Virus record (IMG/VR): IMGVR_UViG_3300020474_000001
Coordinates: 62,001 to 126,000 of that record
DNA: 64,000 nucleotides
Direction: 5' to 3' (one strand)
In this document: piece by piece, positions 15,278 through 52,145 of the stretch
Numbering within the stretch: the first letter of the stretch is position 1
Layout of the letters: each line of letters starts with the position of its first letter
Program-made: the position numbers and the translations under genes
The notes under the pieces: generated by a model
What the model was told of the DNA's origin: nothing
Database searches by the model: none
Seen by the model: only the letters and a program-made list of their open reading frames with translations

Positions 15278-15329
15278 AAAAAAGACTCATCACTACAACC
15301 ATTGCAAGACTAATTTCTAATACAAGCAT
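15246..15329 (-). CDS. 27-aa single-TM microprotein
   Basis: MLVLEISLAMVVVMSLFYGIAICTQRS, preceded by a GGAGGA Shine-Dalgarno. Confidence 0.5.
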   Translation of the reverse strand: MLVLEISLAMVVVMSLFYGIAICTQRS

Positions 15330-15441
15330 TACTTCCTCCCTGGCAGTGTCCTGCCATGCAGATTTGTGCTCTCAAAAGTTTTTCCTCTTTAATTTTTTTC
15401 TGCTTAATGATCTCTAAAATATTGATAGAGACTTTTTTCAT
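15310..15441 (-). CDS. 43-aa basic microprotein
   Basis: MKKVSINILEIIKQKKIKEEKLLRAQICMAGHCQGGSNACIRN; ATGA overlap with the upstream gene. Confidence 0.6.
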   Translation of the reverse strand: MKKVSINILEIIKQKKIKEEKLLRAQICMAGHCQGGSNACIRN

Positions 15442-15611
15442 TTTGCTACCTCCACACCACGATACTTAAGAATTCTCTTAGGTTGTGATGCCTCACCAAG
15501 TACTTTATTAGTGTACTCTGTGCTGTCATATCCTACACCACGATATGTGGTGCTGTAACCGGAATTGCGGTTCTGAACATGAACATTGATGAGTTCTTGT
15601 AGTGTATTCAT
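15438..15611 (-). CDS. DUF4278-like small protein (57 aa)
   Basis: MNTLQELINV...TTYRGVGYD...LKYRGVEVAK with two YRGV motifs; CAGGAG SD; directly downstream of the aptamers. Confidence 0.75.
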   Translation of the reverse strand: MNTLQELINVHVQNRNSGYSTTYRGVGYDSTEYTNKVLGEASQPKRILKYRGVEVAK

Positions 15612-15645
15612 TGGTTTACTCCTGAAGTAGTTGGATTTTTAGGTC

Positions 15646-15824
15646 CGTTCCTTCAGTCGTTTGCGTCCCATTTACACTCAGGTGTTGCTTCCTTTACAGT
15701 CTCAATCACCTCAGACTTAATAATTTTACTTACACTACTACTTGCTTCAATACGTTGGATCACATCCTCAGCATCGGTGCAATGTATAGCAGAGTAGAGA
15801 AAAAATTCAAACATGGGATGAACG
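15646..15824 (-). ncRNA. Glutamine riboswitch-like aptamer 2 (glnA/Downstream-peptide class) with an ORF-sized P2 loop
   Basis: 5' CGUUCAUCCCA ... UGGGACGCAAACGACUGAAGGAACG 3'; P1 CGUUC/GAACG, P2 UCCCAU/AUGGGA. Confidence 0.7.
15653..15814 (-). CDS. 53-aa microprotein nested in aptamer 2
   Basis: MFEFFLYSAIHCTDAEDVIQRIEASSSVSKIIKSEVIETVKEATPECKWDAND; intact 162-nt frame. Confidence 0.7.
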   Translation of the reverse strand: MFEFFLYSAIHCTDAEDVIQRIEASSSVSKIIKSEVIETVKEATPECKWDAND

Positions 15825-15827
15825 CCC

Positions 15828-16064
15828 CGTTCCGCGACTTACTTGCGTCTCAAAGCAAATTACACTCACCTTCGACTTTGCTTCTAAGATATCTAATTAG
15901 AAATCTTTTGGAGCCATAGTCCAAATTATCATCTTCGATAATCTCTGCTGCTCTTTCTTGCCACCTTTCACATGGCATATGCCAGTTATAAGGTTTAGTC
16001 AAATGATCAGCGTGAGAAGCGAAAATTGTTAATCCGAGTAAGATAGTTTGCATTGGGATGAACG
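15828..16064 (-). ncRNA. Glutamine riboswitch-like aptamer 1 with an ORF-sized P2 loop
   Basis: 5' CGUUCAUCCC ... GAGACGCAAGUAAGUCGCGGAACG 3'; P1 CGUUC/GAACG; extended P2 UCCCAAUGCAAA/UUUGCUUUGAGA. Confidence 0.65.
15850..16053 (-). CDS. 67-aa microprotein nested in aptamer 1
   Basis: MQTILLGLTIFASHADHLTKPYNWHMPCERW...VEGECNLL; the ORF-track start at 16107 lies upstream of the promoter. Confidence 0.7.
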   Translation of the reverse strand: MQTILLGLTIFASHADHLTKPYNWHMPCERWQERAAEIIEDDNLDYGSKRFLIRYLRSKVEGECNLL

Positions 16065-16071
16065 TATGGTT

Positions 16072-16100
16072 ATTATAACCGTTACTAACTATATAGTCAA
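16072..16100 (-). promoter_or_regulatory. Sigma70 promoter of the riboswitch transcript
   Basis: TTGACT-17nt-TATAAT; predicted start about 1-2 nt before aptamer 1. Confidence 0.8.
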
Positions 16101-16107
16101 ATAGCAA

Positions 16108-16123
16108 TGTAACATACGATACA
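16108..16123. promoter_or_regulatory. NtcA binding site
   Basis: TGTA-ACATACGA-TACA, a perfect GTA-N8-TAC palindrome just upstream of the -35. Confidence 0.7.
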
Positions 16124-16125
16124 AT

Positions 16126-16807
16126 TTAATAATTTCTCCCATATCCACCAGATCTTCCTTTACTAGTGTTTCTTTGAGTCCTATTTGTGTGATTATAGTT
16201 ACCAGAAACTCTCATTCCGGAATTTTCTCCAGCAGGAGAAGGTATGTTTCTAAGACTTCCAGAACTCCCTCTAGTATCTCTAGGTTTAGATCCATATCCA
16301 GTATTCTTCTGAACCTCTACTTCCTTTCTCTGAGGTCTATCATCACTATTACTTGCCTTAGATTTTTTCTGCGCGTCCTTCAATTTTTTAATTTGCACCA
16401 TCGTGCTTACCTGGTCCTGAGGACTGCCACCTCTTTTTCTTCCAAGTGAAGCAATCCTCGACGAGATCTTGTCATTGCCACCACCCTTTCCCCAGAAAGG
16501 TTTTTTCTCCTCTACAATCTTTGGAGATGACCTACGCTTAGACACTGGAAGTATAGGCTTAGTCGGCAATCTAAGTTCAGGTGGTTTAAATCCAGAATAT
16601 TCTTTATCAGATGCTATGATTTTATTTTTAATCGCTTCAAAATCTTTTATCTGCTCTTTACGAGCAATATGATCCATTGGATCTAACTTTCTGTTCTTTA
16701 TCTCATTCATCTTTGCACATGCAACCTTACGGCCAGCAGTCCAATACTGCTGACCTGGGCACGTATATTTACTAGATTCCGAAATAAATTCCTTGAAGGT
16801 TCTCATT
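16126..16807 (-). CDS. Basic putative internal head protein
   Basis: MRTFKEFISE N-terminus, K/R/S/G-rich; ATAAATA late promoter at about 16828-16834. Confidence 0.55.
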
Positions 16808-22335: not shown

Positions 22336-22445
22336 TTGAAAAAGGGTAGGTAATAGTGCAGGGAACACTAATGGTGATATTTCCACGACACCCTCCATCG
22401 TGGATATTAGAGACGTGTTTATACACCCCATAGGTCTCGGTTGAT
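22336..22445 (-). ncRNA. PhotoRC-II-like structured psbA leader
   Basis: GAGAC...GTCTC stem and TCCACGAT/GTCGTGGA stem with a GAGGG loop, in the position of the cyanophage PhotoRC-II motif. Confidence 0.65.
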
Positions 22446-22497
22446 GGTGTATCATCGGATCAAGCAACTTCACATTTCTTAACCCGTTGATGTAACT

Positions 22498-38799: not shown

Positions 38800-38873
38800 T
38801 CGGGATGATAGGATTCGAACCTACGGCCACTCGCTCCCAAAGCGAGTGCTCTACCAAACTGAGCTACATCCCG
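38800..38873 (-). tRNA. tRNA-Pro(TGG)
   Basis: CGGGATG acceptor, TTTGGGA anticodon loop, GGTTCGAATCC. Confidence 0.93.
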
Positions 38874-38896
38874 ATAAAATGAGTATAAATCAAAAA

Positions 38897-39058
38897 TCAA
38901 GATTCGTCAAGACTATCATTCTCTTCTATTTCTTTTAGATCCTCTTCATTTAAAAGATCAATCCACTCCTCATCAGGAGTGAAGAGGATTGGACCCTCCT
39001 CAATCCTCTCCTGAAGTTCTTCTAATAAAGGATCTCTTTTTTCTTTATTGTTTTCCAT
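38897..39058 (-). CDS. 53-aa acidic hypothetical protein
   Basis: MENNKEKRDPLLEELQERIEEGP... Confidence 0.5.
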   Translation of the reverse strand: MENNKEKRDPLLEELQERIEEGPILFTPDEEWIDLLNEEDLKEIEENDSLDES

Positions 39059-39348
39059 CACAAATCAATATCCTTTTTTAATTGAGCAAAAGCATCTTGC
39101 CTACCTTTTATCATTCCCTCAATAAAACCTGCCCTTTTCTCCCAGGTATCTCCAGTATCTGATCCCCTCTTAGGATTAATACACCTATGATCACCCAACT
39201 TATTGCAAACTAATCCTGCAAGATCTTCTTCAGAATTTTCACTTGAAGCACCAGTTGCCCATACATGTTTTCCATTTAACCACACCGCTTCACACTTCTC
39301 ACATTGCTTTCTTTCCAATTTAAAATCAGAAAATTCTTTATCAGACAT
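39058..39348 (-). CDS. Conserved Cys-rich hypothetical protein
   Basis: CEKC..WLNG.H.W, DLAGLVCN..CINP. Confidence 0.7.
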   Translation of the reverse strand: MSDKEFSDFKLERKQCEKCEAVWLNGKHVWATGASSENSEEDLAGLVCNKLGDHRCINPKRGSDTGDTWEKRAGFIEGMIKGRQDAFAQLKKDIDL

Positions 39349-39553
39349 GATTTTTCTCCTGTTGAGATTTAAATTCCTTTCTATCCTTTTCCAGTTCCCT
39401 TTCAATCTTTTTCTTGAACATCCACAGTCTAAAGTTTAAAAAGGCATACCGAGTATTAAGGTCAATAAAAGCAATTAATCTCATAGTAGCATTATATCCT
39501 CCATCAAGCAATAATACAATAACGATTAAGACAAGCAGATAGAATAGTGTCAT
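39341..39553 (-). CDS. Small membrane protein
   Basis: N-terminal TM; CTAAATA late promoter upstream. Confidence 0.6.
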   Translation of the reverse strand: MTLFYLLVLIVIVLLLDGGYNATMRLIAFIDLNTRYAFLNFRLWMFKKKIERELEKDRKEFKSQQEKNHV

Positions 39554-39586
39554 ATAATTTAATTACTTGTAGATATTTAGTTGTAA

Positions 39587-39673
39587 CGGAAGAGAGAGGA
39601 TTCGAACCTCCGGAGGACTTGCACCCTCGCCAGTTTTCAAGACTGGAGCCATAAACCACTCGACCACTCTTCC
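39587..39673 (-). tRNA. tRNA-Ser(TGA)
   Basis: GGAAGAG acceptor, CTTGAAA loop, long variable arm. Confidence 0.93.
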
Positions 39674-39919
39674 TTATCGCTCTTCGAAATCAATACGACG
39701 AACTTTACGTTGTCGTCTTGCCTCCTGATAAGCAAGATCAGAAGCAGAAAGTTGATCACCAACCTTTTGCTTTGTATAGTTTAACATAACAACCTCATTT
39801 AAGTCAACTGCTGATACTTTATCTTCTTTGACTGTCATCATATTTTGACATCCACAAACCTGAGTTTTTGTATTACTTACTATTTCTGTATTACATACTT
39901 TGCATCTTACGATAATCAT
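39674..39919 (-). CDS. Conserved Zn-ribbon hypothetical protein
   Basis: CKVC...CGC, RKVRRIDFEER. Confidence 0.7.
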   Translation of the reverse strand: MIIVRCKVCNTEIVSNTKTQVCGCQNMMTVKEDKVSAVDLNEVVMLNYTKQKVGDQLSASDLAYQEARRQRKVRRIDFEER

Positions 39920-39943
39920 TTTTCATGGTCCTCCTATTAGGAA

Positions 39944-40015
39944 TGCAAGATGAGGGATTCGAACCCCCGACAACCTCGGTGTAAACGAGACACTCTACCA
40001 CTGAGTTAATCTTGC
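39944..40015 (-). tRNA. tRNA-Val(TAC)
   Basis: GCAAGAT acceptor, TTTACAC loop. Confidence 0.92.
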
Positions 40016-40018
40016 AAG

Positions 40019-40090
40019 CTGGCCCGGCTGGGATCGAACCAGCGACAACTTGATTAACAGTCAAGCGTTCTACCGCTGAACTACAGGCCA
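40019..40090 (-). tRNA. tRNA-Asn(GTT)
   Basis: TGGCCTG acceptor, CTGTTAA loop. Confidence 0.92.
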
Positions 40091-40109
40091 TTGTACTCCC
40101 CGAAGGGAA

Positions 40110-40181
40110 AGCGGAATACCGGATTCGAACCGGTGACGTTCAGCTTGGAAGGCTGACATTCTACCGCTGAATTAATTCCGC
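40110..40181 (-). tRNA. tRNA-Gly(TCC)
   Basis: GCGGAAT acceptor, CTTCCAA loop. Confidence 0.92.
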
Positions 40182-40222
40182 AGCGATATGGTAATTATAA
40201 AGTATTACCAAACCTTTGTCAA

Positions 40223-40693
40223 CTATTCAAAAATAAACTCTCTCCATTCTGATACTTTTGTTCTTTCCAATTCCAACATGACTTTGCTGAGTGGTGCTTT
40301 TGGTTTTGAGCGAAGTTTCATGTTTGTCTCGTGCAAATATTTATTACCCTTTGCAACATTACATTTATCACAACAGGCAACCAAATTATCCCAGGTGTCC
40401 CCACCACCTTTACTTCGTGGAATTACATGATCGATTGTTAAATTTCTTGTTGATCCACAATACTGACAAGAGTATCCATCTCTTTTATAAATCATATTCC
40501 TTGTCGGTGTAGTTTCAGAAAATCGTAAAAACGGTATTCTGACAAAATTGACAAGTCTAATCACCCTCTTCGATATGAGTTTTGCTTTTTCCTTAAACAA
40601 AAGAACTACAGCTCTTTTCCAATTTGTGAATTGAAGCGGTTCATAAGAACTATTCAGAACTAAAATCGTAGAGTGCGGTTCTACCATTTCCAT
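40223..40693 (-). CDS. HNH endonuclease (McrA/HNH_5-like)
   Basis: RDGYSCQYCG..LTIDHVIPRSKGG..WDNLVACCDKCNVAK. Confidence 0.92.
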   Translation of the reverse strand: MEMVEPHSTILVLNSSYEPLQFTNWKRAVVLLFKEKAKLISKRVIRLVNFVRIPFLRFSETTPTRNMIYKRDGYSCQYCGSTRNLTIDHVIPRSKGGGDTWDNLVACCDKCNVAKGNKYLHETNMKLRSKPKAPLSKVMLELERTKVSEWREFIFE

Positions 40694-40730
40694 AAGAATT
40701 CTTTCATCCTCAAATGTATTTATTGGGGAA

Positions 40731-40804
40731 CGACTCAGGTAGGATTCGAACCTACGACCGACTGCTTAGAAGGCAGTTGCTCTATCCAGCTGAGCTACTG
40801 AGTC
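40731..40804 (-). tRNA. tRNA-Arg(TCT)
   Basis: GACTCAG acceptor, CTTCTAA loop. Confidence 0.93.
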
Positions 40805-40812
40805 AAAAAAGG

Positions 40813-40886
40813 CGGGATAGATGGGGCTCGAACCCACGACCCCCAGCGTGACAGGCTGGTGCTCTAACCAACTGAGCTACTACCCC
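40813..40886 (-). tRNA. tRNA-Asp(GTC)
   Basis: GGGGTAG acceptor, CTGTCAC loop. Confidence 0.92.
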
Positions 40887-52072: not shown

Positions 52073-52145
52073 TGGAGAATAGGAGACTCGAACTCCTGAC
52101 AGCCTGCTTGCAAAGCAGGTGCTCTACCAACTGAGCTAATTCCCC
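52073..52145 (-). tRNA. tRNA-Ala(TGC)
   Basis: GGGGAAT acceptor with G3-U70, TTTGCAA loop; own promoter TTGACA-17-TATAAT at 52156-52184. Confidence 0.93.

What the first reader, a model, noticed from the sequence alone, without database searches (positions are those of the whole stretch)
15653..16053. The two nested microproteins look like distant paralogues (Cys-closed helical hairpin)
Both have a hydrophobic N-terminus and exactly two Cys, 36 and 35 residues apart, with the second in an E-C motif (GEC, PEC). Counting from the first Cys they share I at +10, L/V at +16, K at +21, L/V-I at +24/25 and L/V at +28. Inference: the aptamer plus ORF duplicated as one unit and the proteins stayed under selection, possibly as exported or disulfide-bonded peptides or as a heterodimer.
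Basis: partly seen in the sequence, partly recalled or inferred. Interest (0 to 1): 0.65.

Follow-up and report, generated by a model that had tools for sequence, protein, structure and literature searches.

The report
Paralogous microproteins nested inside riboswitch aptamers
Two tiny cyanophage genes, each sitting inside the hairpin loop of one of two back-to-back glutamine-sensing RNA switches, are confirmed to be distant copies of one two-cysteine helical-hairpin protein family of unknown function.

Summary
ORF A (67 aa, 16053..15850, minus) and ORF B (53 aa, 15814..15653, minus) are real, protein-selected genes (PHROG 6471 and 504). All 187 distinct relatives extracted have exactly two Cys, 34-40 residues apart (34-36 in all but three). 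Window-level profiles show nothing (P 0.36). With the full diversity of ORFs at the two positions, hhalign gives P 5e-6 to 3e-6 (probability 86-89%), an ungapped Cys-to-Cys alignment, while shuffled and reversed controls score far lower. Free-standing relatives score on both family models.

Each ORF fills the variable hairpin of one aptamer of a tandem glutamine riboswitch, transcribed from a sigma-70-type promoter and followed by a DUF4278 (IF17-like) gene. Rfam misses these aptamers because the ORFs split them. In relatives either aptamer can be compact. The closing stems and the anti-Shine-Dalgarno helix covary.

"Duplicated as one unit" is unproven, because distant family members are ordinary free-standing genes. 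Export looks unlikely for ORF B, and an obligate heterodimer is contradicted by frequent B-without-A loci. Protein function remains unknown.

The parts
16072..16100 (-). Sigma-70-type promoter, TTGACT, 17 nt spacer, TATAAT. The predicted start lies a few bases before the first aptamer.
   Evidence: 11 of 12 consensus positions. The same TTGAC-N17-TATAAT arrangement occurs in 40 of 70 relatives scanned. RNA-library contigs cover 15300-16074 and none lie in 16082-16300.
16051..16064 (-). Aptamer 1, 5' half: P1 strand CGUUC, then AUCCCAAUG, the 5' strand of the variable hairpin, which contains the ORF A start codon.
   Evidence: It matches the 5' consensus AUCGUUCAuCccc of RF01739, as aligned in compact relatives.
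15850..16053 (-). ORF A, 67 aa: two-Cys helical-hairpin microprotein (PHROG 6471). It occupies the hairpin loop of aptamer 1.
15828..15849 (-). Aptamer 1, 3' half (GACGCAAGUAAGUCGCGGAACG). It starts immediately after the ORF A stop codon.
   Evidence: It is invariant in relatives. The stem across ORF A covaries.
15812..15824 (-). Aptamer 2, 5' half (CGUUCAUCC, then C and AUG), 3 nt after aptamer 1. The ORF B start codon lies in the hairpin's 5' strand.
15653..15814 (-). ORF B, 53 aa: two-Cys helical-hairpin microprotein (PHROG 504). It occupies the hairpin loop of aptamer 2.
15646..15667 (-). Aptamer 2, 3' half (GACGCAAACGACUGAAGGAACG). It is dual-coding: it supplies ORF B codons D-A-N-D and the stop codon, which is why that C-terminus is invariant.
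   Evidence: (W49 nearly invariant, D50 A51 N52 D53 invariant).
15619..15627 (-). CUUCAG, overlapping the GGAG Shine-Dalgarno of the downstream gene. It pairs with CUGAAG (15656..15651) in the aptamer-2 core, which contains the ORF B stop codon.
   Evidence: 148 of 157 distinct leaders are fully paired, and CUAAAG always occurs with CUUUAG (42/42). The helix is present in the minimum-free-energy fold.
15438..15611 (-). Downstream 57-aa gene with two YRG motifs, DUF4278 (IF17-like): the gene the riboswitch is expected to control.
   Evidence: PF14105, E 6.8e-4, 20.4 bits, below the cut-off of 25.3. Relatives reach 28.1 bits. A gene of this type follows the tandem in nearly every locus whose downstream gene was extracted.

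Best explanation
ORF A and ORF B are diverged members of one superfamily of microproteins. The shared layout is a short hydrophobic N-terminus, a first Cys, a helix-loop-helix of about 35 residues, and a second Cys. In T4-like cyanophages one copy lies in the variable hairpin loop of each aptamer of a tandem glutamine riboswitch, upstream of an IF17-like (DUF4278) gene. Shown here: the homology, protein-level selection, the nesting, covariation of the stems that close each ORF, and covariation of the anti-Shine-Dalgarno helix. Inferred: the start codon and upstream region of each ORF are the P1 and hairpin strands of its aptamer, so glutamine-stabilised folding should block their translation while freeing the Shine-Dalgarno of the downstream gene. 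Translating ribosomes should in turn prevent aptamer folding. A ribosome stopping at the ORF B stop codon, which lies inside CUGAAG, would also open the anti-SD helix. The proteins themselves are most likely small cytoplasmic binding or regulatory hairpins in which the Cys pair staples the hairpin or binds a metal. That last part is conjecture.
For: Homology:
- hhalign of 126 aptamer-2 ORFs (RNA-imposed tail trimmed) against the A family gives P 2.6e-6, probability 88.7%, over 44 ungapped columns from Cys to Cys. 300 column shuffles had mean 8.5 and maximum 14.1 against a real score of 35.0; the reversed profile scored 9.8.
- Using only ORFs I extracted from the two positions gives P 5.4e-6.
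- B-core alone gives P 2.9e-4.
- The A HMM scores aptamer-2 ORFs up to 16.2 bits, against a maximum of 7.2 for 5040 decoys, with both Cys in register.
- Free-standing relatives P0195 and P0199 hit the A profile (E 1.8e-5 and 1.5e-4 library-wide) and the B HMM (26.3 and 15.4 bits).

Cys: exactly two in all 187 ORFs.

Coding: entropy by codon position runs 3 > 1 > 2.

Fold.

Nesting and RNA:
- Motifs and architecture.
- Compact relatives score 33.7 bits on RF01739.
- Stem covariation: 0 of 1000 permutations matched the native value.
- Anti-SD covariation.
- DUF4278 downstream, matching the known riboswitch-DUF4278 link (PMC6212724).
Against: - The two window proteins alone show no detectable similarity.
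- The reverse test, B HMM against aptamer-1 ORFs, does not exceed decoys.
- Helical hairpins are a common solution for small proteins, and Foldseek finds nothing significant.
- No Rfam model hits the window or the whole phage genome, and even compact relatives stay just under the gathering score.
- Ligand binding by a split aptamer with a 150-200 nt loop is untested.
- The direction of regulation of the nested ORFs is inferred only. The stop-codon/anti-SD overlap suggests a coupling that could work the opposite way.
- No evidence bears on the Cys chemistry or on a binding partner.
Confidence: 0.72

Rival explanations
1. The two microproteins are unrelated. The shared features (hydrophobic start, two Cys, amphipathic helices) are convergence imposed by small size and by living in equivalent RNA contexts.
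For: There is no pairwise or shallow-profile similarity. Early profiles were marginal: P 0.017, with 10 of 300 shuffles as good. The B HMM does not pick out A sequences above decoys. The RNA does dictate some residues, namely the ORF B tail and the start-codon context.
Against: The signal grows steadily with profile diversity, to P of about 3e-6. Reversed profiles, which keep helical periodicity, score 9.8-12.3 against 30-35. The RNA-imposed tail was removed before testing. Intermediates score on both models. The Cys spacing is held at 34-36 in all but 3 of 187 ORFs.
Confidence: 0.12
2. The ORFs are not translated. The 150-200 nt inserts are structured RNA extensions of the aptamer hairpins, and the open frames are incidental.
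For: The inserts sit exactly where the aptamer tolerates variable length. The whole leader folds better than shuffles (z -2.85). ORF A has no obvious Shine-Dalgarno sequence.
Against: Codon-position entropy runs 3 > 1 > 2 in both families. Length variation comes in whole codons. Amino-acid motifs are conserved down to 35% identity, and the frame was open in the 63 relatives aligned. Distant homologues are ordinary free-standing genes with their own terminators. PHROG families exist for both.
Confidence: 0.05
3. The microproteins are secreted. The N-terminus is a Sec signal peptide, and the mature 40-55 residue hairpin is disulfide-stapled in the periplasm or thylakoid lumen.
For: The A family has an uncharged run of about 11 residues followed by small residues such as A-S-H-A or T-L-A. 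One aptamer-2 variant (L133) has a canonical signal peptide with Lys2, a Leu-rich core and a T-Y-A site. The invariant Cys pair suits a disulfide. The nearest, non-significant fold match is a disulfide-stapled two-helix mini-protein.
Against: Only 1 of 61 (A) and 1 of 126 (B) have Lys/Arg in residues 2-5. 109 of 126 B-type ORFs carry Asp/Glu there, and their first Cys is already at residue 12. AlphaFold2 builds the ORF B N-terminus into helix 1 of the hairpin.
Confidence: 0.15
4. A and B work as an obligate heterodimer, with four Cys forming a shared metal or disulfide site.
For: They are adjacent, co-transcribed paralogues, each with two Cys.
Against: In an unbiased sample of 73 loci, 64 carry the B-type ORF but only 17 also carry the A-type ORF, and 1 carries A without B. 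Loci with A and a compact aptamer 2 also exist (L004, L016-L019).
Confidence: 0.08

Closest known systems
Glutamine riboswitch, type 1 (glnA RNA, RF01739) and type 2 (Downstream-peptide, RF01704), often in tandem and upstream of DUF4278/IF17-like genes (PMC2864571, PMC6212724, PMC6698751)
   Same: The conserved core is the same (CGUUCAYCC ... GGACGCAA ... GAAGGAACG). The tandem arrangement, the DUF4278 gene downstream and an anti-Shine-Dalgarno pairing that uses the aptamer's 3' core also match. Compact copies in relatives align end to end with both Rfam models.
   Different: In the window the variable hairpin of each aptamer holds a 53- or 67-codon translated ORF whose start codon lies in the hairpin stem. 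ORF B also ends inside the 3' core. No Rfam model detects these copies. Ligand binding was not tested.
PHROG 504 and PHROG 6471 (phage protein families of unknown function)
   Same: ORF B matches PHROG 504 (E 4e-21) and ORF A matches PHROG 6471 (E 1e-21) over their full length.
   Different: The two are catalogued as separate, unannotated families. This work links them as one superfamily and places them inside riboswitch aptamers.
ORFs housed in peripheral loops of group I/II introns (for example homing endonuclease genes)
   Same: A protein-coding ORF sits in a loop of a structured functional RNA, so the RNA must fold around it.
   Different: Here the RNA is a ligand-sensing aptamer, not a ribozyme. 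The ORFs are microproteins, not mobility enzymes. The start and stop codons are part of the functional helices.
Small cyanobacterial regulator proteins (IF7/IF17, CP12, PirA class)
   Same: Size of 50-70 residues, a link to nitrogen or redox control, carriage by cyanophages (CP12), and a Cys pair in the case of CP12.
   Different: No sequence similarity was found. This is an analogy from general knowledge and was not tested.
Z34C, an engineered disulfide-stabilised two-helix mini protein A domain (PDB 1ZDC)
   Same: It is the top Foldseek row for the ORF A model: two antiparallel helices stapled by a terminal Cys pair (rmsd 0.8 over 29 columns).
   Different: E 2.2 is not significant, and the protein is artificial. 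It serves only as a structural picture of a Cys-closed hairpin.

Membership tests
One superfamily containing ORF A and ORF B | Significant profile-profile similarity with controls | tested here: met
   P 2.6e-6 and 5.4e-6. Shuffles reached at most 14.1-18.1 and reversed profiles 9.8-12.3, against real scores of 30-35. B-core alone gives P 2.9e-4.
One superfamily containing ORF A and ORF B | Both Cys conserved and aligned to each other | tested here: met
   exactly two Cys in 187/187 ORFs, with Cys1-Cys1 and Cys2-Cys2 in register.
One superfamily containing ORF A and ORF B | Same predicted fold between the Cys | tested here: met
   AlphaFold2 gives, for A, helices 28-40 and 46-57 (pLDDT 92-96), and for B, helices 2-24 and 30-43 (pLDDT 76-85). 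The models could not be superposed with the tools available.
One superfamily containing ORF A and ORF B | Intramolecular disulfide closing the hairpin | not testable with these tools
Glutamine riboswitch aptamer (RF01739 / RF01704) | Score at or above the Rfam gathering threshold | tested here: not met
   There is no hit at E <= 10 in the window or the genome. Compact copies in relatives reach 33.7 bits against a threshold of 35, and 27.4 against 33.
Glutamine riboswitch aptamer (RF01739 / RF01704) | Conserved core nucleotides in the right order (CGUUCAYCC, hairpin, GGACGSAA, GAAGGAACG) | tested here: met
   Searches found two copies of each half, with 0.38 and 0.01 expected by chance. Compact relatives align end to end with both Rfam models.
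Glutamine riboswitch aptamer (RF01739 / RF01704) | Variable hairpin stem supported by covariation | tested here: met
   native strand pairs are more stable than re-paired ones (-4.1 against -2.1 kcal/mol for aptamer 1, -5.7 against -4.9 for aptamer 2), and 0 of 1000 permutations matched. Examples are UCUCAUG/CAUGAG, UCUUAU/AUAAG and UCCCA/UGGG.
Glutamine riboswitch aptamer (RF01739 / RF01704) | Selective binding of L-glutamine | not testable with these tools
   This needs in-line probing or ITC on the full-length split aptamers.
Glutamine riboswitch aptamer (RF01739 / RF01704) | Location in the leader of a DUF4278/IF17-like gene | tested here: met
   literature.
Sec-type signal peptide (exported peptide hypothesis) | Positively charged n-region, hydrophobic core of at least 7 residues, small residues at -1 and -3 | tested here: inconclusive
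   A has an 11-residue uncharged run but no Lys/Arg. B has an acidic residue at positions 2-5 in 109 of 126 and its Cys at residue 12. No SignalP was available.
DUF4278 (PF14105), downstream gene | Pfam gathering score | tested here: inconclusive
   The window protein scores 20.4 bits against 25.3. The orthologue at the same position in L003 scores 28.1 bits. All five relatives tested have DUF4278 as their best family.

The most novel reading that the evidence does not exclude
Cyanomyoviruses widely carry 'split' glutamine riboswitch aptamers whose variable hairpin holds a translated microprotein gene. Ligand binding and translation of the nested ORF would then be mutually exclusive. One aptamer would switch the microprotein off and the downstream IF17-like gene on, and two paralogous microproteins would be wired this way in tandem. 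This would be a previously unrecognised riboswitch architecture. It would also mean phage riboswitches have been greatly undercounted, because covariance models cannot see aptamers split by ORFs.
Probability: 0.45. Interest if true: 0.85.

Novelty: new variant of a known kind. Interest (0 to 1): 0.7.

Why it matters
It joins two anonymous phage protein families (PHROG 504 and 6471) into one widespread two-Cys hairpin superfamily. It also ties them to a defined regulatory context: glutamine sensing upstream of a putative glutamine-synthetase inactivating factor. That context gives a concrete handle for finding their function during infection.

The context itself may matter more. A survey of riboswitches reported only two glutamine aptamers in cyanophage genomes and concluded that phages rarely use riboswitches (PMC5473149). 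Here the same aptamer cores occur in tandem in hundreds of cyanophage records (387 records matched the region). They go undetected because ORFs split them. If the split aptamers bind glutamine, this is a compact way to couple a metabolite signal to opposite outputs on nested and downstream genes.

Tried and rejected
- Pairwise BLASTP of the two window proteins gave no alignment.
- hhalign with close homologues only (Neff 1.6) gave nothing. It was not informative because the profiles were too shallow.
- I first read the abutting 3' half plus 5' half as a circularly permuted type-2 ('Downstream-peptide') aptamer in front of ORF B. I rejected this after reading the type-2 structure paper: both types start with CGUUC. 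RF01704 also gives no hit.
- BLAST single-linkage that included database representatives linked A and B at E 1e-6. The links ran through chimeric or read-through gene calls (P0154, P0196), so I discarded them.
- The RNA-imposed DAND tail inflates similarity among aptamer-2 ORFs, so it was trimmed for all later tests.
- Pfam, NCBIfam, PDB sequence search, Foldseek against PDB and the ESM Atlas features search returned nothing useful for function.
- The heterodimer prediction for A plus B returned 'no answer' (score 0.02, after two unreachable attempts). It counts neither for nor against binding.
- The host-genome scan for the A family found two hits, both on Prochlorococcus single-cell contigs. 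The one whose neighbouring genes I read (L224) is phage-like.
- The B family was not found in 301 genomes of that host family (positive control).
- The Ames and Breaker 2011 paper could not be read.

Full report
**What is there**

The window is part of a 207.7-kb T4-like cyanophage genome. It carries a PhotoRC-II RNA and eight tRNAs, the genome size comes, and its relatives are Synechococcus and Prochlorococcus myoviruses.

On the minus strand the finding's coordinates cover two ORFs. ORF A is 16053..15850 (67 aa) and ORF B is 15814..15653 (53 aa).
- Cys28/Cys64 in A and Cys12/Cys47 in B, 36 and 35 residues apart.
- The second Cys in G-E-C and P-E-C.
- Matching I, L/V, K, L-I/V-I and L/V at +10, +16, +21, +24/25 and +28 from the first Cys.

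**Are they genes?**

Both match phage protein families of unknown function over their full length. ORF B matches PHROG 504 (E 4e-21) and ORF A matches PHROG 6471 (E 1e-21). Pfam, NCBIfam and PDB sequence searches give nothing.

Close homologues are abundant in marine metagenomes. A profile search of 1.8 billion representatives finds 65 clusters for family A. In alignments threaded back onto DNA, variability by codon position runs 3 > 1 > 2 in both families: 1.14/0.69/0.48 bits for A and 0.94/0.69/0.42 for B. That is the signature of selection on the protein.

In cultured phages the genes are annotated 'hypothetical protein' (Syn10 CPUG_00199/198, Syn19_186/187). They lie between nrdB and the transaldolase gene.

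**The RNA context**

Each ATG is immediately preceded by CGUUCAUCC(C). Each ORF is followed, or in ORF B's case overlapped, by GACGCAA...GGAACG (0.38 and 0.01 matches expected by chance). These are the 5' and 3' halves of the glutamine riboswitch aptamer.

Rfam finds nothing in the window or the whole genome even at E 10. In relatives, however, either aptamer also occurs in a compact form with an 8-14 nt hairpin. Those compact copies align end to end with RF01739 (up to 33.7 bits, E 5e-4, threshold 35) and with RF01704 (27 bits). The ORFs therefore occupy the variable hairpin of two aptamers that abut with a 3-nt spacer.

This tandem is conserved in essentially all of about 180 related loci. 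A DNA-pattern sample that is blind to protein similarity gave 73 informative loci:

| Aptamer state | Loci |
|---|---|
| ORF in aptamer 2 | 64 |
| ORF in aptamer 1 | 18 |
| ORF in both | 17 |
| Both compact | 5 |

The stems that close each ORF covary (UCUCAUG/CAUGAG, UCUUAU/AUAAG, UCCUAUG/CAUAGG, UCCCA/UGGG). Native strand pairs are more stable than re-paired ones, and 0 of 1000 permutations matched them.

The last five codons and the stop codon of ORF B are the aptamer-2 3' core. This explains its invariant W-D-A-N-D tail.

CUGAAG in that core, which contains the stop codon, pairs with CUUCAG overlapping the GGAG Shine-Dalgarno of the next gene:
- 148 of 157 distinct leaders are fully paired.
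- The UAA-stop variant CUAAAG always occurs with CUUUAG (42/42).

The next gene is a 43-58 aa protein with two YRG motifs in nearly every locus from which it could be extracted. It belongs to DUF4278: 20.4 bits for the window protein and up to 28.1 bits in relatives. DUF4278 is the family known to be controlled by glutamine riboswitches (PMC6212724).

A near-consensus sigma-70 promoter (TTGACT, 17 nt, TATAAT; 16100..16072) sits just upstream of aptamer 1 and recurs in relatives. Contigs from four metatranscriptome libraries cover 15300-16074 and none cover 16082-16300. That is consistent with a transcript starting at the aptamer, but contigs cannot prove an RNA end.

**The paralogy question**

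With the window proteins alone, or with close homologues only, nothing is detectable. The signal rises steadily with diversity:

| Comparison | Result |
|---|---|
| First broadened profiles | P 0.017 to 0.004 |
| Same, empirical check | 10 of 300 column shuffles as good |
| A profile widened with the 65 representatives | P 0.0014; 1 of 300 shuffles as good |

The unbiased DNA-pattern sample then revealed very diverse aptamer-2 ORFs, including forms that look intermediate. One subgroup ends T-D-P-E-C and some of its members have an A-like N-terminus. One A-like protein with a canonical signal peptide sits in aptamer 2. After trimming the RNA-imposed tail:

- 126 aptamer-2 ORFs against the A family gave probability 88.7%, P 2.6e-6 and score 35.0 over 44 ungapped columns spanning both Cys. 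Column shuffles averaged 8.5 (sd 1.9, maximum 14.1) and the reversed profile scored 9.8.
- Using only ORFs that I extracted from the two aptamer positions gave P 5.4e-6.
- The strict B-core alone gave P 2.9e-4, with a shuffle maximum of 18.5.
- An HMM of family A scores real aptamer-2 ORFs up to 16.2 bits, while 5040 composition-matched decoys never exceed 7.2. The alignments put both Cys in register.
- Free-standing family-A representatives such as P0195 and P0199 also score 26 and 15 bits on the B model.

One test did not succeed: the B model does not lift aptamer-1 ORFs above decoys.

All 187 distinct nested ORFs have exactly two Cys, 34-40 residues apart; in 184 the spacing is 34-36. AlphaFold2 predicts the same unit in both proteins: Cys, 13-residue helix, 5-residue loop, 12-14-residue helix, then Cys 4-7 residues later. 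Confidence is high for the A core (pLDDT 92-96) and fair for B. I conclude that the two are homologous.

**What is not supported**

- *Duplicated as one unit* cannot be decided. Family A members always lie in aptamer 1 (59/59) and family B members in aptamer 2 (122/122), so the split is old and position-specific. But all seven loci examined for five distant members are ordinary free-standing genes with no aptamer halves (L101-L103, L228/L229, L231). Each aptamer also exists without its ORF. The family therefore predates or exists independently of the riboswitch, and capture into the hairpins is probably derived.
- *Export* is unlikely for B, which has an acidic residue at positions 2-5 in 109 of 126 and its first Cys at residue 12. 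It remains open for A, which has an 11-residue uncharged run but no basic residue.
- *An obligate heterodimer* is contradicted by the frequent B-without-A loci.
- *The disulfide* could not be tested.

**Most likely mechanism (inferred)**

Everything that a ribosome needs to start on ORF A or ORF B forms the P1 and hairpin strands of the corresponding aptamer. This covers the start codon and the 15 or so bases upstream, and for ORF B also the GGAG formed by the aptamer-1 3' end plus the GAG spacer found in most relatives (the window has GGG there). Glutamine-stabilised folding should therefore shut the nested ORFs. At the same time it should pull GAAGGAACG out of the anti-SD helix and switch the IF17-like gene on. 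Ribosomes on the ORFs should conversely keep the aptamers open.

One complication is that a ribosome terminating on the ORF B stop codon would itself melt the anti-SD helix. Positive coupling of ORF B to the downstream gene is therefore an alternative. Reporter assays can separate the two.

The proteins are most plausibly small cytoplasmic hairpin binders in the manner of IF7, CP12 or PirA. That is conjecture.

**Novelty**

Searches of the held literature found no description of ORFs nested in riboswitch aptamers or of these proteins. A riboswitch survey found only two glutamine aptamers in cyanophages (PMC5473149). The closest analogy is ORFs in the peripheral loops of group I introns.

The B family was not found in 301 sampled genomes of the host family (control). 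The two genome hits for family A lie on Prochlorococcus single-cell contigs, and the one whose neighbouring genes I read (L224) is phage-like; both ORFs are again nested.

Noticed in passing
window 15812..15824 and 16051..16064 (minus) versus 15606..15611: The 5' half GUUCAU is the exact complement of AUGAAC/AUGAAU, the first two codons (Met-Asn) of the downstream DUF4278 gene. That gene starts M-N-T-L in nearly all relatives. The minimum-free-energy fold pairs the aptamer-1 5' half with this start region, so an unfolded aptamer might also mask the downstream start codon.
   Followed up: partly
window 15825..15849 (minus) and relatives: The P1 3' strand of aptamer 1 (GAACG) and the P1 5' strand of aptamer 2 (CGUUC) are only 3 nt apart. 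They form a local hairpin in the minimum-free-energy fold. This inter-aptamer hairpin would compete with both P1 helices and could couple the two aptamers.
   Followed up: no
L087:917-1489: In one relative a 190-aa ORF matching PHROG 314 'homing endonuclease' (E 3e-8; no Pfam hit) is inserted between a compact aptamer 1 and the 5' half of aptamer 2. One search also lists an HNH endonuclease next to this region in phage Sf-FS3.
   Followed up: partly
L024, L045, L065, L066 (about 1440-1510); proteins P0196, P0154: In some relatives the aptamer-1 ORF has no stop codon before the 3' half. By reading the sequence, it appears to run through the inter-aptamer junction and to end 4 nt after the ORF B start codon. 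Database gene calls P0196 and P0154 are in-frame A-B fusions or chimeras that can falsely link the families.
   Followed up: partly
L224:1501-1704, L225, and representatives ending I-I-G-R-K: A subgroup of family A ends G-R-K-stop, encoded by GGACGCAAGUAA. In these the aptamer-1 3' core is dual-coding, just as the aptamer-2 core is for ORF B.
   Followed up: partly
Relatives, between the aptamer-2 3' half and the Shine-Dalgarno (for example L025, L027, L036; spacer 57-67 nt instead of 33-35): About half the loci carry an extra element of about 28 nt with its own small hairpin (GGAUC-ACCCGCAAGGGU-like) in the expression platform. The window has the short form. Its role is unknown.
   Followed up: no
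Downstream gene in relatives: Two forms of the DUF4278 gene occur at the same position. The window's form has no Cys. A more common form (M-N-T-L-T-I-I-K-K-Q...) often carries its own pair of Cys around the second YRG motif.
   Followed up: no
window 22369-22462 (-); 38800-40886 and 52073-52145 (-): A PhotoRC-II RNA (66 bits) and eight tRNA genes, typical of T4-like cyanophages.
   Followed up: no
window 15310-15441 (-): A 43-aa ORF with four Cys (C-M-A-G-H-C ... C) starts at the stop codon of the DUF4278 gene. It has no family match and was not examined further.
   Followed up: no
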